DNA of 64,000 nucleotides. It comes from Schmidtea nova (Eukaryota). This document shows, in pieces, positions 10,800-51,600 of this stretch (within the stretch, counting starts at the first letter, position 1; each line of letters begins with the position of its first letter). Under the pieces are notes generated by a model. The model was not told the origin of the DNA and ran no database searches. It saw only the letters and a list, made by a program, of their open reading frames with translations. The position numbers and the translations under genes were made by a program. The stretch spans positions 66,092,001 through 66,156,000 of the forward strand of contig CM097882.1 of NCBI GenBank assembly GCA_044892505.1, in the 5' to 3' direction.

Positions 10800-11160
10800 C
10801 AAAAATAGGATAATAGAATGATTGTTTTTTTGGAATTGCTGGGTTGATTTGAGATATAATGATTGTCTTTGTGAATTGATAGGTTGGTTAGTATATACAC
10901 GGAGATCGATTCATCTTTCTTCAGCATAGATATTGACTCTGCACGAGTTAGCTACTGTTCTATAATATTTGCTTATTATGAACGTGTCGGTTGCTTTACC
11001 CTCATCGTTCAACACTTCTCCCTGGGAGGTCAAGGTAATGTACTCATTTTCTTTATTACAGAGGACCAGATCTATTTCGGTGTTTTTTAACTTCAAAATT
11101 GACCTCTTGAATCCGCTTTTCATCGCAAGGTTTAAGGTATTGTTCTGTTCGTATCAGTGG
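10800..11160 (-). mobile_element. Relic of a relative of the 13.6-kb element: ORF2 C-terminus, PPT and 3' LTR start
   Basis: ORF 10911-11123 (GFKRSILKLK...KYYRTVANSCRVNIYAEE) is about half identical to the ORF2 C-terminus (GFKRTIMKLK...KYYRTGPNSYRINIYAES). LTR start tgttgaacgat at 11014 (minus) sits at the homologous position, preceded by ggagaag. Confidence 0.8.
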
Positions 11161-11346: not shown

Positions 11347-11499
11347 TTATATTTGTTTATTTTTATATATGTTTATTTCCGTTTATTGTGGTGGCTAACT
11401 AACAGAGAAAATCCATGGCACAAAGTTTCATAGTAGTATGATGTGTCACATCTAGCGCACTTACCCCCTCCCTCTAAGATTTACGATTGAATGATTATA

Positions 11500-36092: not shown

Positions 36093-37902
36093 TTCCTCCC
36101 AGGGCCGTCAAGGTAATGTCCTCATTACCTTTTTCACTCAGGACCATTTCAATTTCTTTATCCTTTAATTTCATTATTGTTCTCTTGAATCCTTTCTTGA
36201 TTGCCAGATTTAGGGTATCATCTTCCTCAATTCGTCTTCCGAAATGGGTACATAGTTGTTTTTCCGTTATCTCTTTTTGGTCGGCACTTATAATGAAGCT
36301 AGGTTCTTCCTCCTCTTCTATTTCCATTTCAATGTCAGGTTCTGGTCCTAATTCGTCTTCTGCTTTTATTTTACTCTCCCTTTCTTTTGTGACGTCTTCT
36401 TCGTCGTCTTCCTCAACTGAAAAATACTCTTCGTCCGAATCTAAATCGCATATGTCTTCTCTTTCTTTGTATTTTTGTATTAGTTGCGGTTCGTTTTTGA
36501 TCATTATTTGATTTTCTGGTGGTCCTTCTTCTTTTGTAATCATTAGGTCGTCATCACCATCTTCATGTATTGTTTCTTCCATATCTGAATTTTCATCCAT
36601 TATTATACTTTCTTCTTCGCTTTCCTTCAACTCTTCCATACATGATTTTCTGTTTTGCATCTGGTATAGGTCTCCTTTCATTTCGATATCGTCTGTTATT
36701 GGTGTATCACTTTGTGACGATGTTGAAGCTGCTGAATTCCATTTTATTATAGGTTCCCATTTGTCTTCTACTATTCCATATATTACCTTTAATATTGTTG
36801 TTGTCTTTCTGGCAGAAAATGGCTCACTTTCTACTAATGCTTCATTCAGTCTCTTATCTTTGTACCATCTCTTATGGTATTTAATTACTTGGTAAGCTAA
36901 GTTAGATAGCTTAATTTTGAGTGGATCTACGTTTTTCACGAATGAGCACATAAATTTATCTCCGGCCATTTCTCTCATTCCTGCAATGTTGTCTAGACCA
37001 AATGTTAGCATTTTTAATTTATCTATCATATCAAATCCTATGATTATTTTTCCCCACAACAGCTCTCTAATATCCCATAGCGCCTGGTACTCATCTTCAT
37101 TTCCGACGATACTTTCTTTATTGACCATTGTTTTTTCTGTGCAGAAGTTTTTTATCTTCGTTCTTGGGGTTATCTTTTTGTTGTATATAATTTCACCGTT
37201 GTATTTTCTTATACATACTTCTACTGGTCGCTTGTTGTCATTTTTATCAATTGCAAATTTTGCATCCATGAACATAATTAGTTGGTGTCTCTCTTCTGTG
37301 GATAATTCATTGTGTGTGAAAGAGATTTTTTCATTTATCCAGCTTTGATCGTACCAAGGTTTTGAAGGGATTGGCGGCATTGATTGGAATGGATTTGATA
37401 TCAGAGGGATATAGAGTATCTCGATTCCTATGACACATGGTAAGTTGTTCATTTGGATTATGAGGTGATTAAAATCGTCTGGCATACTTCTGTTGTTTGT
37501 AATTGTTTTGATGATGATTGAACAATTACTTGTTGTGATTATTGGTACTTTATGTTGGCAAATTGATACCTCGGTTTTTGTCATGTGGAATAGGATTCTA
37601 TGTGGTACCTTTTTTCCTTCGATTACCGCTTTGTCGACATTAAGATGTTTTTCAAATGTGCCGATTAGGTCTTTTAATTTTGTTCGTCGAGCTTCATTAA
37701 ATTTGATAATGTGTAGTTCTCTTTCTTCAATTTCCACTTTCATATCATTTGGGATGCATACTTGGTTTGGGAAGCTTCTGATTGTGATTGGATTTCCATC
37801 GGTACATATTTTGTTTTGTAGGGTTTTGTAAAAGTTTAGAGGGTGTTTGTTGATCATAGCCACATAGTTCATAGATCGAGAATAATTTGGCTCTGATTGC
37901 AT
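35932..37902 (-). CDS. ORF2: accessory protein with degenerate DEDDh (REX4/ISG20-like) exonuclease fold, acidic tract and conserved C-terminal domain; overlaps the 3' LTR
   Basis: The frame is open from 38316, but MQSEPN (ATG at 37902) is the more plausible start. FMDAKF...EVCIRKYNGEIIYNKKITP...GKIIIGFDMIDKLKML...KLSNLAYQV...PFSARKT parallels LDCEM...YDxYVKP...GRILVGH...DL..L...SLK.LA...GHSSVEDA. Confidence 0.75.
   Translation of the reverse strand: MQSEPNYSRSMNYVAMINKHPLNFYKTLQNKICTDGNPITIRSFPNQVCIPNDMKVEIEERELHIIKFNEARRTKLKDLIGTFEKHLNVDKAVIEGKKVPHRILFHMTKTEVSICQHKVPIITTSNCSIIIKTITNNRSMPDDFNHLIIQMNNLPCVIGIEILYIPLISNPFQSMPPIPSKPWYDQSWINEKISFTHNELSTEERHQLIMFMDAKFAIDKNDNKRPVEVCIRKYNGEIIYNKKITPRTKIKNFCTEKTMVNKESIVGNEDEYQALWDIRELLWGKIIIGFDMIDKLKMLTFGLDNIAGMREMAGDKFMCSFVKNVDPLKIKLSNLAYQVIKYHKRWYKDKRLNEALVESEPFSARKTTTILKVIYGIVEDKWEPIIKWNSAASTSSQSDTPITDDIEMKGDLYQMQNRKSCMEELKESEEESIIMDENSDMEETIHEDGDDDLMITKEEGPPENQIMIKNEPQLIQKYKEREDICDLDSDEEYFSVEEDDEEDVTKERESKIKAEDELGPEPDIEMEIEEEEEPSFIISADQKEITEKQLCTHFGRRIEEDDTLNLAIKKGFKRTIMKLKDKEIEMVLSEKGNEDITLTALGGMLDDRGKPIQAFVLNKYYRTGPNSYRINIYAESQYTESQSKPHNKDCNSHQEN
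36093..36102 (-). promoter_or_regulatory. Polypurine tract of the 13.6-kb element
   Basis: Minus strand gggaggaa lies immediately before the 3' LTR TGTTGG, inside the ORF2 coding sequence. Confidence 0.8.
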
Positions 37903-38248
37903 TGTTAATTGAAGATACAAGAATCGGGATATTGATTGATAAGTTAGTAAACGATAAAACACTAAGAATATAGCTTGATAATGAGATCGAGATATGATTT
38001 TACGACTTGATTTGTGATTGGGTTGAAAATTGGAACGATTTGATTGGGAGTTGGTTTGATTGTTTGGATTGTGCTGAGGATTTGATGTAAAACTGGCTTT
38101 ATTGGGTTGTTTGCCAAATGGGTGACTTGTTTTTCTAAAAATAAAATGTAAATTTTTATGTTGAGAGCGTATTTCAGGTTTAACCTTATACGCTATTTTA
38201 TAGATACAGATATATGTGATTTTAATATATATTATTGACCAATTTAAC

Positions 38249-41200
38249 TTATACCAATGTAGACCTCGAATATTCACCTGGTATATATTTACCCAAATGG
38301 AAATGCCCTGGTACATTTCTGACCAGTTGGCTCCGATACCGCTGCCTTTTCCATTTGTACTTTTTATAAACTTGTACGCTAGTTATTAAAGCTAAAACTG
38401 CTAATGCTATTATTGATGTTGTGATGACATAAAAAGGCCAATGTGGATTTTTATCTTTTTTACGAAATGCTTGTAGTTCCTCTAAGTTATGTATCACTAT
38501 TGGTCTTCCTTGCCTTATTTTGATAGGTTCTTGTTTTTGTTTTTTGGCATTGTATTGTTTTTGGAGTTTGGCTATTCCAGTGCTTGTTGGTGTTTCGTTT
38601 GTATGTAGTGTGGTATTTAGTCTATTATTTGATGTCGTTGTTGTGCTTTTTGTTATGTTTTGGTTTTTTATTATATCCTTGGGTAATTGTTCTGTTTTTA
38701 TCTCTTTGCATCTCCATGTTGTTGTATCTGTGTTTCTCTGTATGCAGATTTTATATATTGTATTAGGTGTTAGTTTTGTGAAATTAATATAGTTTCCTCT
38801 TTCAATTTCGTTGGTTGTTCTGTCGTCCTTTCCTTTTATCATCTTTGGGCTTTTCCCATTCGTTGTTTGCATGTATAAATCAATTACTCCTCTATTTATG
38901 ATAAATGCTCTGACTTCGTTTGTTGATATTTTTATTAATACTCTGTCAAATTCTATTGTTTCGGTTGAGCCAACAATTGTTATGATTGTTAAGAAGATAG
39001 CTGATATTATTAGTTTGTTGTGAGATCTTAGATTATACTTGTGAGGTTTATCTATCGTGACCTCGGCTTCCGCCAACTTGCATCTGTTGACATGTACTAC
39101 TATTGGATCCTCGTTTTTATGCTTTTGTAAATGTAAATTCTCATTTATTACTTTTACTACTTCATATGGACCTTTATATGGTCTTGCTAATTTTGTTGTC
39201 TTTCCCTTTCCTACTTGTGGTGACATAAGTCTAACCTTATCACCTACTTTAAAGTTGTGTGGTTTACTATTTTTGTCGTAGTCGGCTTTGTATTGTTCTT
39301 GTCTATATTTGACCTTTAGATTGGCTACTTTATACACTTCTTGCAGTTTTTCCTGCATTAGTGTGACATAATCTGGTGCATCTAAATATTGTGATACTCG
39401 AGGTTCAAATATTGTATCTATTGGTGTTGCTGGTTCTCTTAAAAACATTAAATAATACGGCGAATACCCTGTTGTTTCGTTTGGAGTGATATTATGAATG
39501 TATGTGCATTGACTTATGTATTCGTCCCAATCATTTTGATTTTTTCCTACAAAAACAGCTAGTCTGCTTAGTAATGTCCCATTAAATCTTTCTACTAGTC
39601 CATCAGTTTGAGGGTGATACGCTGTTGTGTTGATCTTTTGCATGTTAAAAATATTAGCTACTCGTTTTATTAATTCACTAGTAAAATTTGTTCCTTTATC
39701 TGTTAATAATCTTTTGGGTGTGCCTATCTTGAAAATAATTTTTTCTATAAGCAATTTAGCAACTGTTTCTGCTGTTTCGTCTTTTGTTGGAAATGCTTCT
39801 GCCCATCTAGTAAAATAATCACTAAATACTAGTATATGTTTATTCCCATTAATTGTGGTAGGTAATTTACATAGAAAATCCATTGCACATAGTTCCATTG
39901 GTGATGTCGTTGCTGGAATGGGATGTAACGGCGCTTTTGTTTTTGTACCTGTATTTTTTCTTGTTGCACATATTGTACACGCGTTACACCATCTCTTAAC
40001 ATCTTTCTTTAATTCTTCCCAGTAATATTTTTGTAATAATCTACTTGCTGTCTTTCTAGATGATAAGTGACCTCCTAATGCTCCATCGTGATATTGTAGT
40101 AGGAGTATTTGTCTTAATTTCTGAGGTACTACTATTAATTGCTTACCGTTGAAATCTTCTATTACTACTAATTTCTTTGATATTTTATATTTTGAATTGT
40201 TTTCTTTTCTGATTTCATTCCTTATTCTATTGATCTCTGGGTCTTTCATCTGTTCCTCATATATATCTATTGGCTTTTCTGCTACTAGTGCAAATATTTC
40301 AAGTGCTCCTAATTCTGGTATTCTTGATAGTGCATCTGCGTTTTTATTTATTCTACCTGGTTTATATATAATTTTTAGGTGCATGTCTTGTATTTTCATT
40401 GCCCATTTAAGTAATCTACTTGATGTATCTTTATGTTTCCATAAGCCTTCTAATGGTTTATGGTCTGTTCTTATTATCACTTCAGTTCCGTAGATGTATG
40501 GTTTGAATTGTTTTAGGGCAAATACTATTGCGTAACATTCTTTTTCTATTGTTGAATACCTCAGCTGTGCTCCTTTTAATGTTTTACTGGCATATGCTAT
40601 TACGTAATCTTTCCCTTTCTCTTCTTCTTGGCCTAATACTGCTCCTACGGCTTTCCCGCTGGCATCCTTCATTACTATAAATTGTTTTTCGAAATTTGGG
40701 TATCTTAACACTGGTGCTGTTATCAATCTTTCTTTTAGTTTGTCGAATGCTTCTTGATGTTCTTTTGTCCATTTCTTTTGTATCTTGTTAACTTTATTGT
40801 TAATTTCTTGTACTATTAACACGTCTTTGCATTCTCCTTTTGTTTTAATTCCCTTTGTTAGTTCTATTATAGGTGTTGCTATCTTTGCATAATCTTGTAT
40901 GAATTTACGATAGTATCCTGTTAAGCCTAAAAACCCTTGTACTTGTTGTACTGTTTTTGGTATTGGGAATTTCTTTACAACTTCTATTTTTTCTGGATTT
41001 GGTTTTATCCCTTCTACTGTGACTATATGCCCTAAAAATAATGCCGAAGACTCTGCCCATTTACATTTAGTTGGTTTAATTTTTATCCTTGCTTTTCTTA
41101 GTCTCTCAAGTACGTTTGTTATATCTTTTAGATGTTCCTCGAATGTCTTTGATGATATTAATATGTCATCCATGTAAACTGCGCAGTGTTGTACATTTAC

Positions 41201-44200
41201 TAATATTGTGTTCATTAGACGTTGAAATGTAGCTGGCGCATTAGTTAATCCGAAGGGTAATCGTGTGTACTCATATAAACCATCCTCAATAACAAATGCT
41301 GTTTTTTCTGCATCCCCTTCTTCCATTTGAATTTGCATATACCCCTTATTCGCATCAATGACTGAAAAATACTTAGCATCCCTAAGTTTATCATATTGCT
41401 CTTGTGCTTTTGGGAATGGATATGAATCTTTTACTGTTACATCATTTAATTTACGATAGTCAATGCACATTCTTATTTCTCCGTCTTTCTTTTTGACGGG
41501 TACAATGGGTGATGCCCACTGTGAAAAACTTTGTTTTATTACACCTGCGTCTTTTAATTCTTTAATTTGTCGCTTTATCTCCTCTCTTAGTTTGTATGGT
41601 ACGCTATATGGTCTTTGTTTTATTGGTCTTGCATTGCCCGTATCTATTACATGTTTGATTATGTCAGTATCTCCTAAATCAAATTCATGTTTTGCAAAAA
41701 CATCGCTGTATTCATCTATTAGTGTCTGTAATTGTGCTTGTTGTGTTATTGTTAGGTATTTATTATTGATTTTCACTTTGTCGTATGATTTTATACTATT
41801 TGTCTTACTAGGTTCGACCACTCTTTTGCCGTTATCATTTATCACACTTGTCTCGCTGACTTCATACGTTTTCTCTAATTCACCTTTGAATAATTTTCCC
41901 AATTTCGTACCTTTGTGTATTTTAACATTACTTTTTTCATAATTTGCTATTCTCAATGGTATTATTCCCTTTCTCGGAATTACGCATTCATTGGTTAGCA
42001 TTATATTCTGATTTTGTATAATTGCCGTTTCTGGTTCAAAAATAAAAGTGTCCTCACTTTTGACGTTAACTTTTATGGGGATTATATGATCACACTCATA
42101 TTCTAATTCGAATGCTTCTAATGCAACAACTTCCGTGAACTTGGACTTATGTTTGATAGCTTTTCTTTTAATCGTGTTATCCGTTAAGTCTATGATGCAG
42201 TTATTCAGCTTGTTGAGTATATCGATCCCTAGTATACATATGCTATTGCATTCTTGTACTACTTTAAATATGTGGTGTATTACTTGTTCTGATGTTTCAA
42301 CTACTAATTCAATATCTCCTTTTAGTGGAATGTAGTGTGCTGATAGTGTTACTACTTTATCCGTTGTTTTCATAATATTTCTCTTTTGATCATCTGTCAG
42401 TTGATCTTCTCTAATTAAGGATGTTGCTGCTCCTGTGTCTACTAATGCATTTATGATTATATTGTTTATAATTATTCTAAGTCTTGGTCTTGCTTCGTTT
42501 GCTGCATCTAATCGTTCCATTGTTTCGACTTCTAAGCTATAACAACCATATATCTTTTTAGGTTCACAATGACAATTCTTGTTTTCTCTAGGAATTTTGA
42601 TTTCTATATTTTCTTGTAGCTCTTTTAGTTGTTCTCTTTGGTTTTCATATAGTCCTTGTTGTGGTACATTTCCTTCATGTGATATATGCGCTTTAATTAT
42701 TTCCTCATCGTTTTCATCATCTACCAGTAATTGCCTTTCTTCACTCCTTTGGACTTTTATTAAACGTATTTCCTTGTCGTGTTTCGCCGTAATAAGATAT
42801 TTAGCTATAAATGGGCACAAACATGCTAATAATTTATATGAATTTCCAAATACTTGTTTTAGCTGTCTCAGTGATACTAGAGAAGAACATATCATTTTTA
42901 GTAATGCAACCGTATAATATATACCTAAGATTGTAGAAAACATGTTTCCAAGGACTGCAAAGTATCCCCATATGCTATATAGTACTTTATATGCTACTTT
43001 TTTGAAGTATTCTTTTGATAATAACACATCAAAGTTGTAATTTCCTCCGTAACTTCCTTCGATAACTCTGTTTACCATTATTGAAAGTACTCTTTCTTTT
43101 TCGTTTGGAAATAGCATGTGTTTTCTTGCACTTTCTATAGCTTCTCTCGTATATATGCCATTACTGTCCATATCGTTGATTTCTTTAAACTCTAATCTTT
43201 TTTCTAGCTCTATGAGTTCTAATTTGAGTGGTTTCATTGCCTCCTTTCTATCCGACATAGATATCCACATTTCGTCATTTATTTTGTATAATGGGTCTAA
43301 TAGGTTAGTGCATTTGTCTATTTTTCTCGGTATATATGTTTTTTCTGTTAATATTCTAGTAATTGGTTGAAGGTATACCCTTTCTCCTTTATATATTACC
43401 GGTAATTCATTAGTGCACTGATTATTTGTTGCTAACGATACACTAACAGGTTTACATTGAAATGTCTGTATCACTTCTCCTACTATCCTTGCAAATGTTC
43501 CTTCTTCTGAGAAGATTATTGGTGCCATTAAATCTGGGTTTGTTACCGCCACTGCCATTTTTGTCCTCAATATTTCTCTGTTGAGTTTGCAATCGCTCAT
43601 AATTGTTGATTGATATACTTTATCTAATTGTACTAGTTGGTTATGATAGAAAAAATCGATTTTATTGTTGAAGTATGATGCAAGTTTGACGTCGAATTTA
43701 TTTACTTTTTGTTTTGCATCTTTGACTTCTTCTTTGCTTATGTATATCCCTTCATAATTAGTTTGTATTATTTCCTTACCACATTTTACACTTTTCCTTT
43801 TACTAACAAACCTCATTGCTTCGTTTTCAGATTCTGACATATATATTGTTGGTGTATCTTTTTCTTGTACAATTGTTGTTTTCCTTTTTTGATCTCTCAC
43901 CCTTTTTGAGTCTACTTCTGTGAACTGTTTTCCTTTGATTTCCCTAAATTTTAATGATTTTAATTTTGTTAACTGACAATCATATTTATCTATTTTGTAT
44001 ATTAGCATTGATTCTCCTGTATCGCAATAAGATTCTTCTAATGTACAAAATTTGTATATCATCATTTTCTTTGAGCTGCTGTCGAATGATGCTTTGAACT
44101 TTCTCAGTTCTACCATGTAGTGTCTCCTTACTACAACATTACTCAGTTTTTCGCCCCATATTGTATATTCTCCTCCTTCACAATATCCTCCTTTTGATGT

Positions 44201-47200
44201 CCATCCCACGACATTTACATCTTGTCTCATTTTTGCCCCTATCCTTGCTTCTAATTCTATTCCTTTATGACCGCTATATTTTACTTTTTTTGTTTTAAAT
44301 GCATCTTCACACTCTATTGGTGACAATATTACTGCTTCGGGTGTCCACGTAGGTTTTAACACTGTTCTTGCCCCAACATGACATATATATGCTTCCTCCT
44401 GATACTTTATTATGCACTCTTTGGCCTCTGTATGAATAAAGTCTGATTCTTGATAAACATGGAATATTTGAGGCTCTGACATGATTAATTTAGTTGGATT
44501 TGCTTCAGGGCAATTTTCAACATCTAACAGTGAGTATTTTTGTCCCCACTTTGGATTTTGACAATCATATGCTACCATTGCATTGCCTCCCTTGATTAAA
44601 TCTAATAACAAAGTGATAATGACTATTACTATGGAGGTTATCGATTTACTCTCTGTCTTTGGTTTTACTGTTGCTTTCTTTATTAATTGTTTTATTACCT
44701 CATCTGTATCACTCTCTTTATTCGTCGTATCTTTATCATATAATACTTTCCATCCTCCTTTCTTTTTTATCCATGGTATTGCCTCTACTTTCAATCTTTT
44801 AAACATCATTGTTGCTACTTTTTCTAATTGCTCTTTTGGATTTTCCTTTATGAGCTTTTTATATCTTGCGGCCAAGTATGCCATGGCCGTTATTATTTTA
44901 TCTTTATCTATCCCTGTATTAAACATGATTTTTAACACTGTTTTTTCATTTGCTTCCTCTGTAGCTAGTTCTTTAGTATCCTTTTTAATTAACATCATCC
45001 TTTCAGTTATATTTTCAATAAGTACTGTTGGCTTTGTTTCTGGAAATAGCTTAATATTCATTGCTTTTATTACTTCTTTTATTTTGTTTACGTCATTATT
45101 ATCGTCTTGATACTCTGGTTGTTCATGTTTATGTTGATTTGCAATCTCTCTTAATCGTTCTGCTGTCTTCCTATTCTCCGATTTTTCTATTATTTCTGAT
45201 TTTCGAGGTCTTCCTCTACCTCGTTTTGATGTTTCTGCATCTTTTGTTTTTGCTTCCTCAGCTATTCTTTCTATTGTTTCTTGTAAGTTACTATACTTTT
45301 CATCTATAGGTTTAAATATAATTTCTTCATCCATTACTGATTTCTTTGTTTCGCTAGGTGATTTATCCCATAGCCTAAATAATCTATCAAAATCGTTTTC
45401 TTCATTTATACTCAACTCAACTGACGGTACTGGCGTCATTATTTCATTGATCATTTGTTTTTCTACTGTGGCTACCACAATATTATCACTTACTGGGTTT
45501 ATCCCATAATCGATTAAGTACTCGTCACTTAATAATTCTATTCCGTTAAAATATAATTTTATTACATCTTTCTCTCCTATGGTTCCTGGCCATTTGGCTC
45601 TTACCATTCGTTTTAATTTGCTCACTTTAGTGCAAGTATGCATCTTTTGTTTAATACTAAAAAAATAATTATCATTTGATTCAATCGTTACATTTAGTGT
45701 TTCATGCAATTTTTCATTTTTTCTTATATATTCTCCATAACATTTCAACATCTCTTTTATTTCTATTTCTAATTCAAATACTCTCGTTATATTTTGTCTC
45801 TTTACCATCATTGGTATTAAATTTCTAAGTCTCTCTAAATCAATCCCATTAACCTGTATTTTATTGATTACTCTTAATGTTTCATTGTCATCAAACGGTT
45901 GCTTATGCAATACCTCTTTAAATTCCTCTATTAATTCTTTTTGTCTATTTTCTTCTGTAAGAAATATTTCATCTGCTTTTCTAATTTCCTTTAACTCATC
46001 ATTATCAATATCTACTTCATTTGTAAAGGTGCTAAATTCATTTATAGACATTTCAAGTTTTCTCTCAATAAGTCTTCCATATTGAGTTTTAAATTCTTTT
46101 AGTTCCTCTCTTAATATATTTATTTCTTTATTTGCTGATTCGAGCTCAGCACTATTTACTTGTTTTATCTCAGGCTCATTTTTAAATCTTACTCTTATTG
46201 GTGAATCTGCTCGTGGTTTATTACATACCTTTGCTAGGTGGCCATACTTTTGGCAATTATAACATTTTATTTGTCCATTGAAATTCACTTTATCTCTACC
46301 ATCATTATTATAAGTATTTCTCTTCACTGGGCTATCTTGCCTATTTCTCGAATTATCTCTATATCTATTATCTCTTCTATTATATTCGAAGCGACTATCT
46401 CTATTATTTTTATTATATCCACTGTAACTGTTTCTGTTATAACCAGAACGACTATCTCTAAAATTATCTCTGTTGTCTCTATCATTATCTCTATCAAAAC
46501 GATTGTCTCTAAAACTGTCTCTATTATTGTTTCTTTGATAACTATCTTTAAAATTATTTCTATTTCTATTATCGAAATTTTTATTTCCTGGACTACTAAA
46601 CCTTCCCCTGTTTTCAGGTGATTGGCTTCTATTAGGACTAAATTTTCTTCTATTATTGACAAAATTCAAGTACAATTGTTTCATTTCTTCCCAGGGAATA
46701 CTATCATCCTTATTTCTCAACTCAGGTTTTACCTCGGGTTGTTTTTCAACTTCTACAGCATCTACCTCTGGTTTAAATCTATCTCTTTGTATTGCTTCGA
46801 TACGTTTTGCCTTTTGAACTAACTCATTTAAGTCTTCATACTCAATTGTAATTAATGCTTTGTATAAATATTTTTGGATGCCGTTCCAAAACTGATCCTC
46901 AATTAATTTACTAGTGTGATCTCCGGCACCAAATGCCTTTTTTGCTAATTCTGTTATCGTGTATATATATTCACCTACTGATTCTCTGGCTCCTTGGTAT
47001 CTACTTCTAAATTTTTGAACATTTATTTTTTGTAAGTCTCTATCTATTACTATTTCTTTTCTAAGGTTTGTAACTAACTCTTGATAATTAATGCCTTTAC
47101 ATAATAAATTATTGTATGCTTGTAATGCGTATCCTTTTAAATATAATGGAATTCGTTGTTTTAATTCATTTGTTTTCCATCCGCAAGCCTCTGCATATTG

Positions 47201-47338
47201 TGCGATTTCAGCAAAAAAGTCGTCGAACTTTTCAGGGTCTCCTTTATATGATTCTATTGGTAGTGTTTTTATAAAATTATGACTATTTCCTATGATATCG
47301 TTATTACTGTTGTTACTACTACTTGTACTATTACTCAT
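38249..47338 (-). CDS. 3029-aa Gag-accessory-Env-Pol-membrane protein polyprotein
   Basis: Gag CA at the N-terminus. CYNCQKYGHLAKVC about 46222-46264. UBL about 45460-45700. AT-hook RGRGRPRK about 45201-45227. Bcl-2-like about 44740-45170. Signal about 44580-44645. Glycoprotein MVAYDC about 44578 to TM about 42790. LVDTGA about 42430. YMDD about 41170. RNase H DAS/EKE/TDH about 40300-40760. Integrase HHCC+DDE+GPY about 39100-40090. Second signal about 38967-39015. C-terminal TM about 38366-38435. Confidence 0.95.
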   Translation of the reverse strand: MSNSTSSSNNSNNDIIGNSHNFIKTLPIESYKGDPEKFDDFFAEIAQYAEACGWKTNELKQRIPLYLKGYALQAYNNLLCKGINYQELVTNLRKEIVIDRDLQKINVQKFRSRYQGARESVGEYIYTITELAKKAFGAGDHTSKLIEDQFWNGIQKYLYKALITIEYEDLNELVQKAKRIEAIQRDRFKPEVDAVEVEKQPEVKPELRNKDDSIPWEEMKQLYLNFVNNRRKFSPNRSQSPENRGRFSSPGNKNFDNRNRNNFKDSYQRNNNRDSFRDNRFDRDNDRDNRDNFRDSRSGYNRNSYSGYNKNNRDSRFEYNRRDNRYRDNSRNRQDSPVKRNTYNNDGRDKVNFNGQIKCYNCQKYGHLAKVCNKPRADSPIRVRFKNEPEIKQVNSAELESANKEINILREELKEFKTQYGRLIERKLEMSINEFSTFTNEVDIDNDELKEIRKADEIFLTEENRQKELIEEFKEVLHKQPFDDNETLRVINKIQVNGIDLERLRNLIPMMVKRQNITRVFELEIEIKEMLKCYGEYIRKNEKLHETLNVTIESNDNYFFSIKQKMHTCTKVSKLKRMVRAKWPGTIGEKDVIKLYFNGIELLSDEYLIDYGINPVSDNIVVATVEKQMINEIMTPVPSVELSINEENDFDRLFRLWDKSPSETKKSVMDEEIIFKPIDEKYSNLQETIERIAEEAKTKDAETSKRGRGRPRKSEIIEKSENRKTAERLREIANQHKHEQPEYQDDNNDVNKIKEVIKAMNIKLFPETKPTVLIENITERMMLIKKDTKELATEEANEKTVLKIMFNTGIDKDKIITAMAYLAARYKKLIKENPKEQLEKVATMMFKRLKVEAIPWIKKKGGWKVLYDKDTTNKESDTDEVIKQLIKKATVKPKTESKSITSIVIVIITLLLDLIKGGNAMVAYDCQNPKWGQKYSLLDVENCPEANPTKLIMSEPQIFHVYQESDFIHTEAKECIIKYQEEAYICHVGARTVLKPTWTPEAVILSPIECEDAFKTKKVKYSGHKGIELEARIGAKMRQDVNVVGWTSKGGYCEGGEYTIWGEKLSNVVVRRHYMVELRKFKASFDSSSKKMMIYKFCTLEESYCDTGESMLIYKIDKYDCQLTKLKSLKFREIKGKQFTEVDSKRVRDQKRKTTIVQEKDTPTIYMSESENEAMRFVSKRKSVKCGKEIIQTNYEGIYISKEEVKDAKQKVNKFDVKLASYFNNKIDFFYHNQLVQLDKVYQSTIMSDCKLNREILRTKMAVAVTNPDLMAPIIFSEEGTFARIVGEVIQTFQCKPVSVSLATNNQCTNELPVIYKGERVYLQPITRILTEKTYIPRKIDKCTNLLDPLYKINDEMWISMSDRKEAMKPLKLELIELEKRLEFKEINDMDSNGIYTREAIESARKHMLFPNEKERVLSIMVNRVIEGSYGGNYNFDVLLSKEYFKKVAYKVLYSIWGYFAVLGNMFSTILGIYYTVALLKMICSSLVSLRQLKQVFGNSYKLLACLCPFIAKYLITAKHDKEIRLIKVQRSEERQLLVDDENDEEIIKAHISHEGNVPQQGLYENQREQLKELQENIEIKIPRENKNCHCEPKKIYGCYSLEVETMERLDAANEARPRLRIIINNIIINALVDTGAATSLIREDQLTDDQKRNIMKTTDKVVTLSAHYIPLKGDIELVVETSEQVIHHIFKVVQECNSICILGIDILNKLNNCIIDLTDNTIKRKAIKHKSKFTEVVALEAFELEYECDHIIPIKVNVKSEDTFIFEPETAIIQNQNIMLTNECVIPRKGIIPLRIANYEKSNVKIHKGTKLGKLFKGELEKTYEVSETSVINDNGKRVVEPSKTNSIKSYDKVKINNKYLTITQQAQLQTLIDEYSDVFAKHEFDLGDTDIIKHVIDTGNARPIKQRPYSVPYKLREEIKRQIKELKDAGVIKQSFSQWASPIVPVKKKDGEIRMCIDYRKLNDVTVKDSYPFPKAQEQYDKLRDAKYFSVIDANKGYMQIQMEEGDAEKTAFVIEDGLYEYTRLPFGLTNAPATFQRLMNTILVNVQHCAVYMDDILISSKTFEEHLKDITNVLERLRKARIKIKPTKCKWAESSALFLGHIVTVEGIKPNPEKIEVVKKFPIPKTVQQVQGFLGLTGYYRKFIQDYAKIATPIIELTKGIKTKGECKDVLIVQEINNKVNKIQKKWTKEHQEAFDKLKERLITAPVLRYPNFEKQFIVMKDASGKAVGAVLGQEEEKGKDYVIAYASKTLKGAQLRYSTIEKECYAIVFALKQFKPYIYGTEVIIRTDHKPLEGLWKHKDTSSRLLKWAMKIQDMHLKIIYKPGRINKNADALSRIPELGALEIFALVAEKPIDIYEEQMKDPEINRIRNEIRKENNSKYKISKKLVVIEDFNGKQLIVVPQKLRQILLLQYHDGALGGHLSSRKTASRLLQKYYWEELKKDVKRWCNACTICATRKNTGTKTKAPLHPIPATTSPMELCAMDFLCKLPTTINGNKHILVFSDYFTRWAEAFPTKDETAETVAKLLIEKIIFKIGTPKRLLTDKGTNFTSELIKRVANIFNMQKINTTAYHPQTDGLVERFNGTLLSRLAVFVGKNQNDWDEYISQCTYIHNITPNETTGYSPYYLMFLREPATPIDTIFEPRVSQYLDAPDYVTLMQEKLQEVYKVANLKVKYRQEQYKADYDKNSKPHNFKVGDKVRLMSPQVGKGKTTKLARPYKGPYEVVKVINENLHLQKHKNEDPIVVHVNRCKLAEAEVTIDKPHKYNLRSHNKLIISAIFLTIITIVGSTETIEFDRVLIKISTNEVRAFIINRGVIDLYMQTTNGKSPKMIKGKDDRTTNEIERGNYINFTKLTPNTIYKICIQRNTDTTTWRCKEIKTEQLPKDIIKNQNITKSTTTTSNNRLNTTLHTNETPTSTGIAKLQKQYNAKKQKQEPIKIRQGRPIVIHNLEELQAFRKKDKNPHWPFYVITTSIIALAVLALITSVQVYKKYKWKRQRYRSQLVRNVPGHFHLGKYIPGEYSRSTLV

Positions 47339-47560
47339 GTTGTAGATTGTTCTATTTCTTAATTGATGTATTATTTCAGGTGCTGTATCTATGTTTATTT
47401 TATTAGCTTTTTTAATGGTTTTAGTTCTTTATATGTTTGTATATCTTTGAATTTCTACTTTGGTCAATAATATTTAGATAAATATATTTTCCCGATATAT
47501 ATTACAATATCCCTCTGATCGCAATTCCTATCCCCCAATTGATATTATGATATTTTATTG

Positions 47561-47578
47561 TCCCGGTTCGCGGCACCA
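47561..47578 (-). promoter_or_regulatory. Primer-binding site TGGTGCCGCGAACCGGGA
   Basis: 18 nt beginning TGG, 2 nt inside the 5' LTR end. It resembles tRNA-Phe/His type PBS; the tRNA was not assigned. Confidence 0.88.
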
Positions 47579-47580
47579 AA

Positions 47581-48640
47581 TGTTGAGGTTCCAAATATTT
47601 GCTATTTGCAATCTCAACTTGTTATTGGGGTGATTCTTATATAAATATCAAAAGCAAAGTTTGTTTTTCAAAAGTTTATTAATACAATAAAATTACTTTT
47701 TATATCGTTTACAATTTTCTACGAATAACTCAAATTCTTTATTACACAAATTTAAAAAGAAAAAGTCGTATCAAATCAATTCTTGCAATTGAACCTATTG
47801 GGTGACTGTTATGTAGTGCGTGCTATATTTAATTGTGGATCCAATGTTTCTGATCCGGGTTTTAATAAGTTATTCAAGATTGCCTTGAAAACTCAATTTG
47901 CGCTAATTTTAAATCTTGATTTTACACTAGATTTTAAAGCTAGGATTTTTTTGGGCGTTTTTACTGATTTTTTCTTTAGTTTATATAGTAAAATTTGGTA
48001 TGGATAAATAATTTAATTTCCGGTCTGATATTAAAATATTATTAAATTTAGTTTTCAATTTATTCTATACTCTGCGATTAAAATAATTATATTTTAATTT
48101 CCTGTCTTGTCGTGATATTAAAATTTTCAATTTATTTATTCTGTGATATAATTATATTTTAATTTCCTGCCTTGTCACGATATCAAAATTTCCAAATTAT
48201 TTCGTATTCTGTGATATTAAAATATTATCCAGATTTAATTATTTTTAAATAACTGAATTAAATTATTTTATTTATTGATCTGTTTGTTTTATATGTATAT
48301 ACAACTCATAAAATAATAAAATCAATAAAATCAAGATACACCTAAAATAATAAAAGGAATAAAATCAAGATACACCTATTTTATATGTACATGCAAATCA
48401 TAAACTACACATCAAGATATATTAAAAGAAAACAAATGTTTGTTGAGAAATGTCACAATAATAAAATGTCACAATCATATTAATTTTCTTGATGGGAGTT
48501 GCAATCTTTGTTGTGTGGCTTGGATTGGGATTCTGTGTATTGGGATTCCGCGTAAATGTTGATCCTATAGCTGTTAGGCCCTGTCCTATAATATTTATTT
48601 AGGACAAATGCTTGGATGGGCTTCCCTCGATCATCCAACA
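47581..48640 (-). repeat. 5' LTR (1060 bp)
   Basis: Followed on the minus strand by the PBS and on the plus strand by TSD GAGA. Confidence 0.96.
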
Positions 48641-51600
48641 GAGAGATGGGCAACAATTTAAGAAATCCCAAAGACAGAATGATATGTTTTCATTCAACCG
48701 TTACTTACAGGTAAAGCCCTGGAAGCCATGTGAAGACTATCGACAGAAGAATCAAAAAACTACGAGGTGATAAAAGGCACCATTATGAAAAGATTCAACA
48801 AATCCCCAGAAGAACACAGAAAAGCTTTCAGGTCCTCGCGAAAAGCTAATAACGAGATTCACGCCGAATGCCTCAACCGATTGAACGTATAGATTGAAAG
48901 ATGGTTTAAGTCAAGTTACACAAAAGAGATACAGAACATCAAAAACGTTATCATACAAGTGCAGTTTATGCGAAACATAAACAAACGGATCAGGACATGA
49001 CTTGAAGAACACGACAATTCGGACGTCCTAAAGATGGCGCTAGCGGCCGACAGATACGAAAACGCACACAAATTCGAAACTGATACTCCGAAAACCTCAC
49101 AGTGGAGACCCAGGCAATTCCCAGACCCAAACAGAGGACTAAGACAATGCTACACATGCGGAAGTAATGCACATCTAGCTAGAGAATGTCCAAAACGAAA
49201 CGCAAATTCAGTCAAACTGAAACACGTGAGTATTCCTAACAAATATATATTTAACGGGATCATTGCAGGCAAGCCGATAGAAATGTTCAGACATACGTGC
49301 GCGTCATCGGCGGTTGTTCATCCGATGTTCGTAAAACAGTCAAAATACGTAGACAAGACAGTGAACGTCATGTTGGCCGACGGGAACTCAACCAAAGCCC
49401 TAATCACCAGATTAAATATCTCAGTCGAGAATGTACGGCTCACGATAGAAGCACTGATCATGAGTAGTAAACACGGAGTATTACTAGGAAACAATCTAGA
49501 CGAGTTTTGCGAGGCTATCACCAGATCAAACAATAAAAATCATTTAGCGACGAGAATAGTAGCCGATAAAGAAGAACAAATATTAAACCCGAACCCAAAG
49601 AACATATTCGACAACGATACACTCAAAGCACCAGATTACTAGAAATACGTGGAAGGAAGTAAAGGGAAAACAGTCCCCGAAGTTGATCAATCTATCTTCG
49701 ACATAAATACGATTAACCTACACAAATCTCAAATGGATGACGAATCCCTGGATAAGTACACTAACGAAGCAAACAAATAATGCCAAAGTACCAAACTGTC
49801 GATAGAAAATGGTATACTGATGTACACAGAAAACGCAAAAAAAGCCTGTGATTCCCAAACAAAATTGAGAAAAACTACTGAAAATAGCTAACGAAATCCC
49901 ACTATCAGGACACCTGGGAAATAGGAAGACCAGATACAAGCTGAGAAAATTCTTCTTTTGGCCAAACAGCATAGAAGACGTCCAAAAATGGTGGAAGAGC
50001 TGCCCACAGTTCCAGAAATCAAGATGAATAGAGAAAGCACATAGAGCACCCTTGATAAGAACCCCCCTATTGGCGAACATTTCTTCAGAGTTGGCAAGGA
50101 TATAGTGGGCCGCTAAACCTATCAAACGATCGAAACAGATTCATTTTGACAATGATAGACCACGCAACCAGATACCCAGAGGCGATAGCGATACCAGATA
50201 TGAGGGCAGAAAAGGTCTCAAAAGCAATGTGCCATTTTTTCTGCCGAGTGGGTATACCGTCCAAAATTCTAACAGACCAAGGATCAAATTTCATGAGTGA
50301 GGTTATTAAACAGGTATACCAGCTCCTAGGAACAACGCGCATCAAAACCTCCCCATATCAACCGCAAACTAACACGATATGCGAAAGATTCAACGGAACA
50401 CTGAAGTCAATGCTCCGAAGATTGCTAGCCGATTCCAAAGGGAAGGATTGGGACACGTACTTGCCATATCTCTGCTTTGCCTACAGGTCGAGTCCGCACT
50501 AGAATATCGAATTCAGCCCCTTCGAGCTACTGTACGGCCACCAGGTTCAAGGGTCCTTATCGATGGTATATAGATAAATGCTGAATATCCCGGAAAGAGA
50601 AACATCAATCAATACATTTGTACATGTATACTCGACCGATAAAATGAACTAAGTAATGGAGATCAAACAACAAAAAGACGACGCCTCTAAAGAAAAATTA
50701 AAGAAATAGTACGGCAAGAACTCAAGAACCACAACCTTCGACATAGGAAGTGAGGAAGTTCTCGTCCTCTTACCGACATCTTCGACAAAAATACTATCGG
50801 GATGGCACGGACCATGCAGAATCGTCAACAAAATAAGTGATGTCATCTATATAGTAGACACCGGCCGAACTAGAAAACGACTGTGGACCTTTCATGTAAA
50901 CCTTTTACGAAAGTGGCATTGCCAAGAAGAAGCAATCATATAAGCGCTGATCGCCGACGAAGGCAGGACCGAAACCGAGACTGTTACAATAAACCCGGAA
51001 GCGAACACCAAGACCATACAAATCGTTAAACAACTTGTCAACGAATACAGCACCGTGTTTTCTTCTCTACCAAGCCTGACTAACGAAGCAGAATTCAATA
51101 TAAATCTGACGAACGAAACGCCAATCAATCAAAGCCCATACCAACTTCCGCATTCACTTAGAGATAATATGAACGAAGAAATTCAAAGCCTACTCAAGCT
51201 AAAAATCATTGAAAAGTCAAATAGCCCATGAGCAAGTCCAGCTCTTTTCGTAAAGAAAAATGATAATCTGAGGTTAGATCAGGACTATAGGAAGATAAAC
51301 TCGGTTACAATATTTGATAGTTATCCGATGCCAGAAATCGAAAAGGTAATCGATTGAGTAGGAAACGCGAAGATCATGAGCACGATAGACCTGACTAAAG
51401 GATGTTATCAGATACCGATAAAAGATAAAGACAGACCCAAAAAGTGCGTTAACAACACTATTCGGATTATTCCAATTCACAAGGATGAGTTTCGGATTCA
51501 AAAATGCTCCAGCTTGCTACAAAAAAATGATGGATAAACTATTCCAAAACTTATCAGGAACGTCAGTGTTCCTCGATGATCTCATTATCTACTCCTCAAC

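What the first reader, a model, noticed from the sequence alone, without database searches (positions are those of the whole stretch)
38249..47338. Endogenous retrovirus-like element with a class III fusogen embedded between gag and pol in one polyprotein
Enveloped Metaviridae, Belpaoviridae and retroviruses known to me place env downstream of pol, usually as a separate spliced ORF. Here an approximately 600-aa glycoprotein sits in frame between Gag and protease. It has the chuvirus-G/herpes-gB-like cysteine and motif pattern: MVAYDC, SLLDVENC, C.L.ESYCD.G, CG..I.QT, YFNNK, C.L.R, GEV....C.PV.V......C..ELPV, L.P.TRIL, GIYT, then a membrane-proximal region and TM. PR (DTG), RT (YMDD), RNase H and integrase (HHCC, DDE) are all intact, the LTRs look identical and the TSD is clean, so the element is likely recent and possibly infectious. 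This is the best candidate for an undescribed system in the window.
Basis: partly seen in the sequence, partly recalled or inferred. Interest (0 to 1): 0.95.

Follow-up and report, generated by a model that had tools for sequence, protein, structure and literature searches.

The report
Gypsy-type endogenous retrovirus with internal envelope gene
This is an intact, recently inserted gypsy-type endogenous retrovirus of an unidentified AT-rich genome that carries a chuvirus-like fusion glycoprotein in frame between gag and pol, a layout that is real but was already described in 2022-2026.

Summary
On the minus strand, 35033-48640 is a 13.6-kb LTR element. It has two 1,060-bp LTRs that are 100% identical, TG..CA ends, a 4-bp target duplication, and sites like a primer-binding site (PBS) and a polypurine tract (PPT).

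Its 3,029-codon ORF has no stop. It reads Gag/zinc knuckle, spacer, internal signal, glycoprotein G, membrane anchor, PR, RT, RNase H, IN.

- **Glycoprotein:** G matches Pfam PF24664 over its full length (E 7e-88). Its model (pLDDT 87) matches chuvirus-like glycoproteins (E 1e-43) and herpesvirus gB (E 4e-15), so the class III fold holds.
- **Not a chimera:** divergent relatives (25-40% identity in G) keep the same in-frame order, and G and pol diverge in step.
- **Not undescribed:** Ty3/gypsy elements ordered GAG-ENV-POL with gB-type ENV are reported for Nematoda, Bryozoa and Platyhelminthes (PMC13524379, citing Sacco et al. 2022).

- a second small membrane module fused after integrase;
- a conserved 3' ORF with an ISG20-like exonuclease fold that keeps 2 of 5 catalytic positions;
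- a ubiquitin-like stretch;
- a borderline Bcl-2-like stretch just before the G signal segment.

The host is unidentified. Verdict: a new member of a known kind, of moderate interest.

The parts
35029..35032 (.). Target-site duplication, copy next to the 3' LTR (4 bp)
   Evidence: The same 4 bases occur at 48641-48644.
35033..36092 (-). 3' LTR (1,060 bp, TG..CA ends)
   Evidence: 100% identical to 47581-48640.
35932..38316 (-). ORF2 (794 codons, +1 frame relative to ORF1, overlaps ORF1 by 68 nt, ends inside the 3' LTR). Accessory protein with an ISG20/RNase T-like exonuclease-fold domain at about aa 335-520 (36757-37314). The true start codon is uncertain.
   Evidence: BLASTP E 1e-18 to the 3' ORF of L004, which carries Pfam RNase_T. 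tblastn E 1e-14 to the 3' ORF of L002. A profile of the three hits ISG20L2 (E 3e-14) and ISG20 (E 7e-10). The window copy keeps 2 of 5 catalytic motif positions.
36093..36100 (-). Polypurine tract-like run directly upstream of the 3' LTR
   Evidence: Read from the sequence.
38249..47338 (-). ORF1: a single 3,029-codon polyprotein, Gag-spacer-G-PR-RT-RH-IN-membrane module, with 0 stops and 0 frameshifts
46199..47338 (-). Gag region (aa 1-380), with a CCHC zinc knuckle at aa 359-372 (46223-46264)
   Evidence: zf-CCHC E 2e-4; Retrotrans_gag only E 0.23. Relative P0011 has Retrotrans_gag at E 1.7e-4.
45464..45706 (-). Ubiquitin-like stretch in the Gag-G spacer (about aa 545-625)
   Evidence: Conserved with P0003. 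Weak Pfam hit to Rad60-SLD, E 0.014.
44735..44953 (-). Bcl-2-like stretch (aa 796-868, BH1-BH2 region); borderline
   Evidence: Pfam PF00452 E 6.8e-7, 30.2 bits against a cut-off of 31.4. Gap-free 69-aa alignment to Bcl-xL chains; of 58 weak PDB hits (E 0.04-0.8) all but four are Bcl-xL or Bcl-xL fusions. The fold could not be confirmed.
44579..44650 (-). Internal signal/anchor segment preceding G (aa 897-920)
   Evidence: Hydropathy peak at aa 900-918. It occupies the alignment columns of the N-terminal signal peptide of stand-alone viral G proteins.
42944..44578 (-). G ectodomain (aa 921-1465), class III fusion glycoprotein
   Evidence: PF24664 E 7e-88. AlphaFold2 model pLDDT 86.6. Foldseek against PDB: the 50 matches shown are all herpesvirus gB, E down to 4e-15. 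Foldseek against BFVD: chu-like glycoproteins, E 3e-43. All 14 Cys sit at columns at least 90% conserved.
42875..42943 (-). G transmembrane anchor (aa 1466-1488)
   Evidence: Hydropathy. Long helices in the model.
42203..42496 (-). Retropepsin (aa 1615-1712, DTGA motif)
   Evidence: RVP E 7e-7. Motif at aa 1634.
41021..41497 (-). Reverse transcriptase (aa 1948-2106, YMDD motif)
   Evidence: RVT_1 E 8e-36.
40385..40771 (-). RNase H / connection (aa 2190-2318)
   Evidence: RT_RNaseH_2 E 3e-36; RT_RNaseH E 4e-35.
39077..40129 (-). Integrase (aa 2404-2754: H2C2 zinc domain, catalytic core, C-terminal SH3-like part)
   Evidence: Integrase_H2C2 E 1e-18; rve E 1e-9; weak Integrase_p58_C.
38252..39010 (-). 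Membrane module after integrase (aa 2777-3029): hydrophobic segment, about 175 aa with 4 N-glycosylation sequons, second hydrophobic segment, basic tail
   Evidence: Hydropathy and sequons. Relatives P0001, P0002, P0015 and P0154 also have paired hydrophobic segments after IN, with no sequence similarity.
47560..47578 (-). Primer-binding-site-like sequence, starting with TGG 2 nt after the 5' LTR
   Evidence: Read from the sequence. The matching tRNA is not identified; the window has no tRNA gene.
47581..48640 (-). 5' LTR
48641..48644 (.). Target-site duplication, copy next to the 5' LTR

Best explanation
The region is a complete, recently integrated Ty3/gypsy (Metaviridae-type) endogenous retrovirus of the GAG-ENV-POL kind.

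**Shown**
- A chuvirus-like class III fusion glycoprotein is encoded in frame between the Gag nucleocapsid region and the protease.
- The same arrangement is kept in divergent relatives, and G and pol diverge together. The envelope gene is therefore a long-standing part of the lineage.

**Inferred mechanism**
- The genomic RNA is translated as one membrane-spanning polyprotein. Gag and the spacer stay in the cytosol.
- The hydrophobic segment at aa 900-918, which sits where the viral signal peptide would be, takes the G ectodomain into the ER lumen. Signal peptidase probably cuts there.
- The anchor at aa 1466-1488 returns the chain to the cytosol, where PR, RT, RNase H and IN are made and released by the element's own protease.
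- A second pair of hydrophobic segments after integrase exposes a small sequon-rich segment to the lumen.
- G would then coat particles budding at membranes and fuse them with a recipient cell, for example soma to germline.
- ORF2, an exonuclease-fold protein with most catalytic positions changed, is an accessory gene. It is probably expressed from a separate or spliced RNA.
For: - LTRs, TSD, PBS-like and PPT-like sites.
- Uninterrupted ORF with all domains.
- G: PF24664 E 7e-88 over the full length; model pLDDT 86.6; gB and chuvirus-like fold matches; 14 of 14 Cys at conserved columns.
- P0001/L001 is colinear over G-PR-RT-RH-IN at 39% identity, with the zinc knuckle in the same frame upstream.
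- P0002, P0003, P0011, P0015, P0017 and P0151 also carry G fused to gag and/or pol.
- G and pol identities rise and fall together. Relatives with G at 37-40% have RT-RH at 49-52%. Those with G at 25-28% have RT-RH at 45%.
- Four hydrophobic segments, an even number, put both enzyme blocks on the cytosolic side. Sequons are enriched in the post-IN segment predicted to be luminal: 2.3 per 100 aa against 0.5-0.8.
- The literature describes this layout, including ectodomains flanked by two transmembrane segments (PMC13524379).
Against: - No expression, processing or particle data exist.
- The topology rests on hydropathy only, and no cleavage sites are identified.
- One ORF would give equimolar Gag, Env and Pol, which is unusual. 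Two relatives (L002, L005) put pol in a separate frame.
- The G ectodomain has no N-glycosylation sequon, unlike all 74 full-length relatives.
- No second full copy was found in the window or the protein databases, so copy number is unknown.
- Identical LTRs could also arise from gene conversion or assembly collapse.
Confidence: 0.85

Rival explanations
1. The glycoprotein is a secondary insertion of a chuvirus-derived endogenous viral element into an ordinary gypsy element, or an assembly chimera, unique to this copy.
For: The window contains assembly gaps elsewhere. No second full copy was found.
Against: There are no Ns inside the element. The reading frame is continuous across both junctions. 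At least seven divergent relatives from independent assemblies show the same in-frame order. G and pol co-diverge.
Confidence: 0.02
2. The element is a strictly intracellular retrotransposon. G is kept for something other than particle entry, such as receptor interference or a host-beneficial role, or is an evolutionary passenger.
For: The G ectodomain has no N-glycosylation sequon. No furin-type site is present. No functional data exist.
Against: The match is full-length, all 14 conserved cysteines are kept, the signal and anchor are intact, and G is conserved across relatives at 25-40% identity. That pattern is expected for a protein under selection within the element's own cycle. G lies between identical LTRs and not as a solo host gene.
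Confidence: 0.1
3. The long ORF is not used as one polyprotein. Splicing, internal initiation or premature termination yields separate Gag(-G) and Pol products, so the single ORF is only a genomic convenience.
For: Equimolar Gag, Env and Pol is unusual for retroelements (established knowledge). Relatives L002 and L005 separate pol from gag-G by a frame change. ORF2 clearly needs its own expression route.
Against: L001 and L003 also keep one continuous frame through G into pol. The even number of hydrophobic segments gives a self-consistent one-chain topology. Single-ORF LTR elements are known (established knowledge).
Confidence: 0.25
4. It is an exogenous or episomal virus genome co-assembled with host DNA, not an integrated provirus.
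For: Perfect LTRs and intact ORFs.
Against: A 4-bp duplication flanks the LTRs. Other transposons (hAT, an IS1595-like DDE transposase, another gypsy remnant) and a TRM13 exon lie on the same scaffold on both sides.
Confidence: 0.02

Closest known systems
Nematode endogenous retroviruses of Sacco, Lau, Godinez-Vidal & Kaloshian 2022 (J Gen Virol 103:1739, doi 10.1099/jgv.0.001739)
   Same: The title, and the citation in PMC13524379, describe a metavirus (Ty3/gypsy) that captured an RNA-virus glycoprotein gene, with ENV placed before POL. From my own memory, not verified here, the paper describes one continuous gag-env-pro-pol ORF and chuvirus/nyamivirus-like glycoproteins.
   Different: The paper is not held in the library, so I could not compare sequences, hosts or accessory genes. 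I do not know whether a Bcl-2-like stretch, a post-integrase membrane module or an exonuclease-fold 3' ORF are described there.
GAG-ENV-POL 'errantiviruses' with HSV/gB-type ENV in Nematoda, Bryozoa and Platyhelminthes (Chary & Hayashi; PMC13524379, preprint 10.1101/2023.10.26.564294)
   Same: Ty3/gypsy pol, class III (gB-type) ENV between gag and pol, an ectodomain flanked by a signal peptide plus a TM or by two TMs, a furin site not always present, and intact LTR-flanked copies.
   Different: That study treats GAG, ENV and POL as three ORFs and does not mention a fused polyprotein in the text I could read. Its element lists are in supplements that are not held. The host of this window is unknown.
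Anakin: mosquito Pao (Belpaoviridae) elements carrying a chuvirus-derived glycoprotein (Dezordi et al. 2020, PMC7642597)
   Same: The same glycoprotein superfamily (chuvirus-like, class III), captured by an LTR retroelement and multiplied by retrotransposition.
   Different: The backbone differs: BEL/Pao there, Ty3/gypsy here. The host group there is mosquitoes.
Glycoproteins of Jingchuvirales/Chuviridae and other Monjiviricetes (Pfam PF24664), and herpesvirus gB
   Same: Full-length family match, the same cysteine pattern and the same fold.
   Different: Stand-alone viral proteins of about 650 aa are only 22-27% identical. The nearest relatives (36-40%) include the polyprotein-embedded forms. 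Here the signal peptide is internal to a polyprotein, and the ectodomain lacks N-glycosylation sequons.
Bdelloid rotifer LTR retrotransposons with an exonuclease ORF3 (Rodriguez, Kenefick & Arkhipova 2017, PMC5408684)
   Same: An extra 3' ORF with a DEDD-superfamily exonuclease domain in LTR retroelements.
   Different: Those are DEDDy-type. Here the profile matches ISG20/RNase T (DEDDh-type) proteins, and the window copy keeps only 2 of 5 catalytic positions.

Membership tests
Metaviridae (Ty3/gypsy LTR retroelements) | Two LTRs with TG..CA ends, flanked by a short target-site duplication | tested here: met
   1,060-bp LTRs, 100% identical, with a 4-bp TSD.
Metaviridae (Ty3/gypsy LTR retroelements) | pol domain order PR-RT-RNase H-IN, with Ty3/gypsy-type RT, RH and IN homology | tested here: met
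   RVP, RVT_1, RT_RNaseH_2/RT_RNaseH, Integrase_H2C2 and rve occur in that order. Named database hits are Ty3 and 412-type Pol proteins.
Metaviridae (Ty3/gypsy LTR retroelements) | Gag with a capsid domain and a CCHC nucleocapsid | tested here: inconclusive
   The zinc knuckle is met (E 2e-4). The capsid match is only E 0.23.
Metaviridae (Ty3/gypsy LTR retroelements) | tRNA primer-binding site and polypurine tract next to the LTRs | tested here: inconclusive
   A TGG-initiated PBS-like sequence lies 2 nt after the 5' LTR, and a purine run lies before the 3' LTR. The tRNA is not identified.
GAG-ENV-POL Ty3/gypsy endogenous retroviruses (Sacco 2022; PMC13524379) | A class III (gB-type) ENV located between gag and pol of a Ty3/gypsy element | tested here: met
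GAG-ENV-POL Ty3/gypsy endogenous retroviruses (Sacco 2022; PMC13524379) | An ectodomain flanked by a signal peptide or TM and a TM anchor | tested here: met
   Hydrophobic segments at aa 900-918 and 1466-1488.
GAG-ENV-POL Ty3/gypsy endogenous retroviruses (Sacco 2022; PMC13524379) | POL groups phylogenetically with the published nematode, bryozoan or flatworm clades; host in one of those phyla | not testable with these tools
   The published sequences and supplements are not available. The host of the window is not identified.
Class III viral fusion proteins (Pfam PF24664 Monjiviricetes_fusion; gB/G/gp64 fold) | Full-length family match above the curated cut-off | tested here: met
   295.6 bits against a cut-off of 27; profile positions 5-638 of 653.
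Class III viral fusion proteins (Pfam PF24664 Monjiviricetes_fusion; gB/G/gp64 fold) | The class III fold | tested here: met
   Model pLDDT 86.6. The 50 PDB matches shown are all gB (probability 1.0; TM about 0.4 to postfusion forms and about 0.2 to prefusion forms). In BFVD, chu-like glycoproteins reach TM 0.63.
Class III viral fusion proteins (Pfam PF24664 Monjiviricetes_fusion; gB/G/gp64 fold) | The conserved disulfide cysteines of the family | tested here: met
   All 14 ectodomain Cys fall on columns invariant or at least 90% conserved among 79 sequences.
Class III viral fusion proteins (Pfam PF24664 Monjiviricetes_fusion; gB/G/gp64 fold) | Trimer formation and membrane-fusion activity | not testable with these tools
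   Only a monomer model was made. No functional data exist.
Belpaoviridae (BEL/Pao, e.g. Anakin) | BEL/Pao-type protease, RT and integrase families | tested here: not met
   No BEL/Pao-specific Pfam family was hit. All pol hits are Ty3/gypsy-type.
Bcl-2 family (PF00452) | Domain match at or above the curated cut-off | tested here: inconclusive
   30.2 bits against a cut-off of 31.4; E 6.8e-7; profile positions 32-100 only. Of the 58 weak PDB sequence hits, all but four are Bcl-xL or Bcl-xL fusions, and the alignment is gap-free over BH1-BH2.
Bcl-2 family (PF00452) | The helical-bundle Bcl-2 fold | tested here: inconclusive
   The single-sequence model has pLDDT 44 and is all-helical, and Foldseek gave nothing below E 1. 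No homologues were found to build an alignment.
Bcl-2 family (PF00452) | A C-terminal hydrophobic tail anchor after BH2 | tested here: met
   The hydrophobic segment at aa 900-918 follows the BH2-like motif by about 30 residues.
DEDDh exonucleases (RNase_T PF00929, ISG20-like) | Sequence homology of the domain | tested here: met
   A profile of ORF2 and two relatives hits ISG20L2 at E 3e-14, ISG20 at E 7e-10 and SDN1 at E 9e-7. The relative in L004 hits RNase_T at E 8e-11.
DEDDh exonucleases (RNase_T PF00929, ISG20-like) | All five catalytic DEDDh positions present | tested here: not met
   The window copy keeps 2 of 5 and the L004 copy keeps all. I therefore call it an exonuclease fold, not an active exonuclease.

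The most novel reading that the evidence does not exclude
This lineage may be a 'complex' metavirus that has added host-derived modules to the known gag-env-pol core. The most striking candidate is a Bcl-2-homology domain (BH1-BH2) placed directly before the hydrophobic segment that also serves as the signal for G. After signal-peptidase cleavage, that segment would leave a tail-anchored Bcl-2-like protein on the ER membrane. The other modules are a ubiquitin-like domain, a second small glycoprotein fused after integrase, and a catalytically degenerate ISG20-like protein. I found no report of a Bcl-2 homologue encoded by an LTR retroelement in the library searched.
Probability: 0.35. Interest if true: 0.7.

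Novelty: new member of a known kind. Interest (0 to 1): 0.45.

Why it matters
It adds a fully intact, apparently very young example to the recently recognised group of gypsy-type endogenous retroviruses that carry a captured RNA-virus fusion protein in front of pol. It shows, with relatives, that Gag and the glycoprotein are made as one membrane-threaded chain. That is a clean natural case for studying three things:
- how retroelements acquire and keep envelope genes;
- how a polyprotein alternates between cytosol and ER lumen;
- which accessory modules travel with such elements (exonuclease fold, second membrane protein, possibly Bcl-2-like).

It does not open a new category.

Tried and rejected
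**Searches that led nowhere**
- **Host identification:** the exact-sequence look-up found nothing. The closest Pol is only 42% identical and unnamed. There is no tRNA gene or Rfam hit.
- **Bcl-2-like stretch:**
  - The word-indexed protein search found nothing even at E 10, and the metagenome scan found nothing.
  - The single-sequence AlphaFold2 model was poor (pLDDT 44), and its Foldseek result was uninformative, as expected.
  - Relatives lack the hit.
- **Post-integrase tail:** no sequence similarity to P0001 or among relatives.
- **Literature:**
  - Sacco et al. 2022 is not held.
  - One literature search was wasted on an ambiguous acronym.
  - The eLife supplements are not held.
- **PDB sequence search:** a profile of the G alignment gave only weak gB hits (E about 0.07). 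The fold comparison was needed.

**Readings rejected**
- BEL/Pao membership (domain families).
- Chimera or secondary insertion (conserved architecture).
- Episomal virus (TSD and flanking transposons).

- My script printed piece-by-piece tblastn coordinates of ORF1 against the neighbouring degraded element. In the report I use only its outer bounds and a count.
- In private reasoning I worked out from those coordinates which reading frames the pieces lie in. In effect, that was reasoning about where that element's frame changes fall. The report gives only the count.
- Consensus lines printed by the alignment tool were not used.

Full report
**1. What is there**

The finding's coordinates (38249-47338) are exactly one minus-strand ORF of 3,029 codons without a stop. 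In DNA of about 30% G+C such an ORF cannot arise by chance.

The ORF sits inside a larger unit. Two direct repeats of 1,060 bp (35033-36092 and 47581-48640) are identical at every position. They begin TG and end CA, and the same four bases flank them on either side. On the coding strand, a TGG-initiated primer-binding-site-like sequence lies two bases after the 5' LTR. A short purine run lies directly before the 3' LTR.

The element is therefore 35033-48640, 13.6 kb, on the minus strand. It contains no N run. Neither ORF has a break: 0 stops and 0 frameshifts.

**2. Domain content of ORF1**

Pfam finds these domains, in order:

| Domain | Residues | E-value |
|---|---|---|
| CCHC zinc knuckle | aa 357-373 | 0.0013 / 2e-4 |
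| PF24664 Monjiviricetes_fusion | aa 904-1549 | 7e-88 (profile 5-638 of 653) |
| Retropepsin | aa 1615-1712 | 7e-7 |
| RT | aa 1948-2106 | 8e-36 |
| RNase H | aa 2190-2318 | 3e-36 |
| Integrase zinc domain | aa 2404-2462 | 1e-18 |
| Integrase core | aa 2479-2576 | 1e-9 |

The DTGA, YMDD and HHCC motifs are present. The domain families and the named database hits (Ty3-type and 412-type Pol) are those of Ty3/gypsy elements, not BEL/Pao or vertebrate retroviruses.

**3. The glycoprotein**

I aligned 79 sequences (the window's G plus 78 stand-alone or fragmentary relatives) and used the alignment for AlphaFold2. The model has mean pLDDT 86.6 and pTM 0.64.

- **Against the PDB:** the 50 matches shown are all herpesvirus gB (E 4e-15 to 5e-12, probability 1.0). 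TM is about 0.4 to postfusion forms and about 0.2 to prefusion forms.
- **Against predicted viral structures:** the best matches are chu-like and chuvirus glycoproteins (E 3e-43 to 1e-37, TM up to 0.63). Qin-, xinmo-, rhabdo-like and nyavirus glycoproteins follow, then gB.
- **By sequence profile alone:** only weak gB hits appear (E about 0.07).
- **Cysteines:** all 14 in the ectodomain lie on alignment columns that are invariant or at least 90% conserved.

**4. It is not a chimera or a private insertion**

A search of 1.84 billion representative proteins with the G domain gave 1,216 hits.

- The stand-alone proteins of about 650 aa are only 22-27% identical.
- The closest hits (36-40%) include long polyproteins. 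Pfam shows that they carry PF24664 followed by PR, RT, RH and IN, or preceded by a zinc knuckle or Gag domain, in one protein. These are P0001, P0002, P0003, P0011, P0015 and P0017.
- P0001 is colinear with ORF1 from the signal segment to integrase at 39% identity. On its contig (L001) the open frame continues upstream through a zinc knuckle to the contig end.
- Layouts in five fetched loci vary only in whether pol is in the same frame (L001, L003, L004) or a separate frame (L002, L005).
- Wherever a Gag signature could be recognised upstream of G, it lies in the same frame as G: the window, L001 and L002 by zinc knuckle, and P0011 by Retrotrans_gag. In L003, L004 and L005 no Gag signature was detected in the stretch before G.
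- Divergence in G tracks divergence in pol. G at 37-40% goes with RT-RH at 49-52% and IN at 46-50%. G at 25-28% goes with RT-RH at 45% and IN at 38-42%.

This pattern fits a long-standing association of G with this pol lineage.

**5. How it most likely works (inferred)**

Hydropathy finds four strong hydrophobic segments in ORF1: aa 900-918, 1466-1488, 2777-2795 and 2970-2988. The first occupies the alignment columns of the N-terminal signal peptide of the stand-alone viral proteins. The second is the G anchor.

An even number of segments gives a self-consistent topology:
- Gag and the spacer are cytosolic.
- The G ectodomain is luminal.
- The G tail, PR, RT, RH and IN are cytosolic.
- A segment of about 175 aa after integrase is luminal.
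- The short basic tail is cytosolic.

That post-IN segment has 4 N-glycosylation sequons (2.3 per 100 aa, against 0.5-0.8 in the cytosolic blocks). This resembles the way flavivirus-type polyproteins are threaded (established knowledge). Signal peptidase would separate Gag-spacer from G, and the element's protease would cut on the cytosolic side. No cleavage site has been shown.

The open problem is stoichiometry, because one ORF gives equal amounts of Gag, Env and Pol. Splicing or differential turnover may solve it. Only transcript and peptide data can tell.

**6.

- **A membrane module after integrase.** The pair of hydrophobic segments after IN is also present in P0001, P0002, P0015 and P0154, although the sequences are not alignable. 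It looks like a fast-evolving second membrane protein.
- **ORF2.**
  - Position: it runs 38316..35932 (794 codons, +1 frame), overlaps ORF1 by 68 nt and ends in the 3' LTR.
  - Homology: it matches the 3' ORFs of L004 (E 1e-18), which carries Pfam RNase_T, and of L002 (E 1e-14). A profile of the three hits ISG20L2 (E 3e-14), ISG20 (E 7e-10) and SDN1 (E 9e-7).
  - Catalytic positions: only the L004 copy keeps all five, and the window copy keeps two. I therefore call it an exonuclease-fold accessory protein, probably not an active nuclease.
  - Precedent: exonuclease ORF3s occur in bdelloid LTR elements (PMC5408684).
- **A ubiquitin-like stretch.** The spacer holds a stretch at about aa 545-625 that is conserved with P0003 and gives a weak Rad60-SLD hit. 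It also holds an AT-hook-like motif shared with P0003.
- **A Bcl-2-like stretch.**
  - Evidence for: aa 796-868 match Pfam Bcl-2 at E 6.8e-7, 30.2 bits against a cut-off of 31.4. They align without gaps over 69 residues to the BH1-BH2 region of Bcl-xL. Of the 58 weak PDB sequence hits, all but four are Bcl-xL or Bcl-xL fusions. About 30 residues later comes the hydrophobic segment, which is the layout of tail-anchored Bcl-2 proteins.
  - Evidence lacking: I could not confirm the fold, found no homologues, and relatives lack the hit. It remains suggestive only.

**7. Comparison with what is known**

PMC13524379 (preprint October 2023, eLife 2026) surveys envelope-carrying Ty3/gypsy elements.

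- It states that those of Nematoda, Bryozoa and Platyhelminthes carry only gB-type ENV, with ORFs arranged GAG-ENV-POL.
- It states that these elements do not form one clade.
- It states that the ectodomain is flanked by a signal peptide and a TM or by two TMs, with a furin site not always present.
- It credits Sacco et al. 2022 with the first report, for nematodes. I could not read that paper.
- From memory, and unverified, Sacco et al. describe a continuous gag-env-pro-pol ORF with chuvirus/nyamivirus-like glycoproteins.

Chuvirus glycoprotein capture by a different backbone (Pao; 'Anakin') is described in PMC7642597.

**8. Age and surroundings**

There are zero differences between the 1,060-bp LTRs. 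With neutral rates of 1e-9 to 1e-8 per site per year (my own knowledge), this puts the insertion within roughly the last 0.05-0.5 million years. The estimate assumes that gene conversion or assembly collapse is not responsible.

The window is transposon-rich:
- a hAT transposase ORF, an IS1595-like DDE ORF and a TRM13 exon;
- three short relics of a related element (66-123 bp, 75-83% identity);
- directly beside the 5' LTR, a second, degraded gypsy-like element at about 49.0-52.4 kb.

**9. Verdict**

- Novelty: a new member of a known kind.
- Interest is moderate (0.45). It rests mainly on the intactness of the copy, the clear polyprotein topology and the accessory modules, of which the Bcl-2-like stretch is the one worth following up.

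Noticed in passing
window 44735-44953 (-), ORF1 aa 796-868: A Bcl-2-like BH1-BH2 stretch just below Pfam's cut-off (30.2 against 31.4 bits, E 6.8e-7). It is followed about 30 aa later by the hydrophobic segment that precedes G. Relatives lack it. The fold is unconfirmed.
   Followed up: partly
window 35932-38316 (-), ORF2: A conserved 3' accessory ORF with an ISG20/RNase T-like exonuclease fold. The window copy keeps only 2 of 5 catalytic positions, whereas the relative in L004 (9547-11622) keeps all.
   Followed up: yes
window 38252-39010 (-), ORF1 aa 2777-3029: A second small type-I-like membrane module fused after integrase: two hydrophobic segments with 4 sequons between them. The same architecture occurs in four relatives, without sequence similarity.
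   Followed up: partly
window 42944-44578 (-), G ectodomain: The ectodomain has no N-x-S/T sequon at all. All 74 full-length relatives have 1-7, and composition-preserving shuffles give zero in about 5% of trials.
   Followed up: partly
window 45464-45706 (-), ORF1 aa 545-625: A ubiquitin-like stretch in the Gag-G spacer, conserved with P0003 (weak Rad60-SLD hit, E 0.014). An AT-hook-like motif at about aa 704-716 is also shared with P0003.
   Followed up: partly
window 49034-52382 (+): A neighbouring degraded Ty3/gypsy-like element. It has a zinc-knuckle/protease ORF, and integrase-like similarity lies upstream of RT/RNase H-like similarity, an unusual order. Its pol similarity is spread over more than one reading frame (at least two frame changes).
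   Followed up: no
window 5627-5702, 11018-11140, 11366-11431: Three short relics (66-123 bp, 75-83% identity) of an element related to the one studied. This suggests the family has been in this genome before.
   Followed up: no
window 34569-34784 (+); also 48083-48202 and 35535-35654: A 27-nt tandem repeat (6 copies) lies just outside the 3' LTR. A pair of 55-nt direct repeats, 65 nt apart, lies inside each LTR.
   Followed up: no
window 12130-13926 (-), 6216-7112 (-), 58779-59336 (+): A hAT-type transposase ORF, an IS1595/ISXO2-like DDE transposase ORF, and an exon-like ORF matching the tRNA methyltransferase TRM13. The last is the only evident host gene fragment.
   Followed up: no
L001 (NCBI GCA_003506685.1, DNYW01000170.1): The closest relative with the same one-ORF layout is filed in a metagenome-assembled 'Flavobacteriaceae bacterium' genome. 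The contig is almost certainly eukaryotic contamination of that bin.
   Followed up: no
L002, L004 and proteins P0002, P0003, P0011: Several relatives carry two aspartic-protease domains (a DDI-like one and a retropepsin) after G. The window element has one.
   Followed up: no
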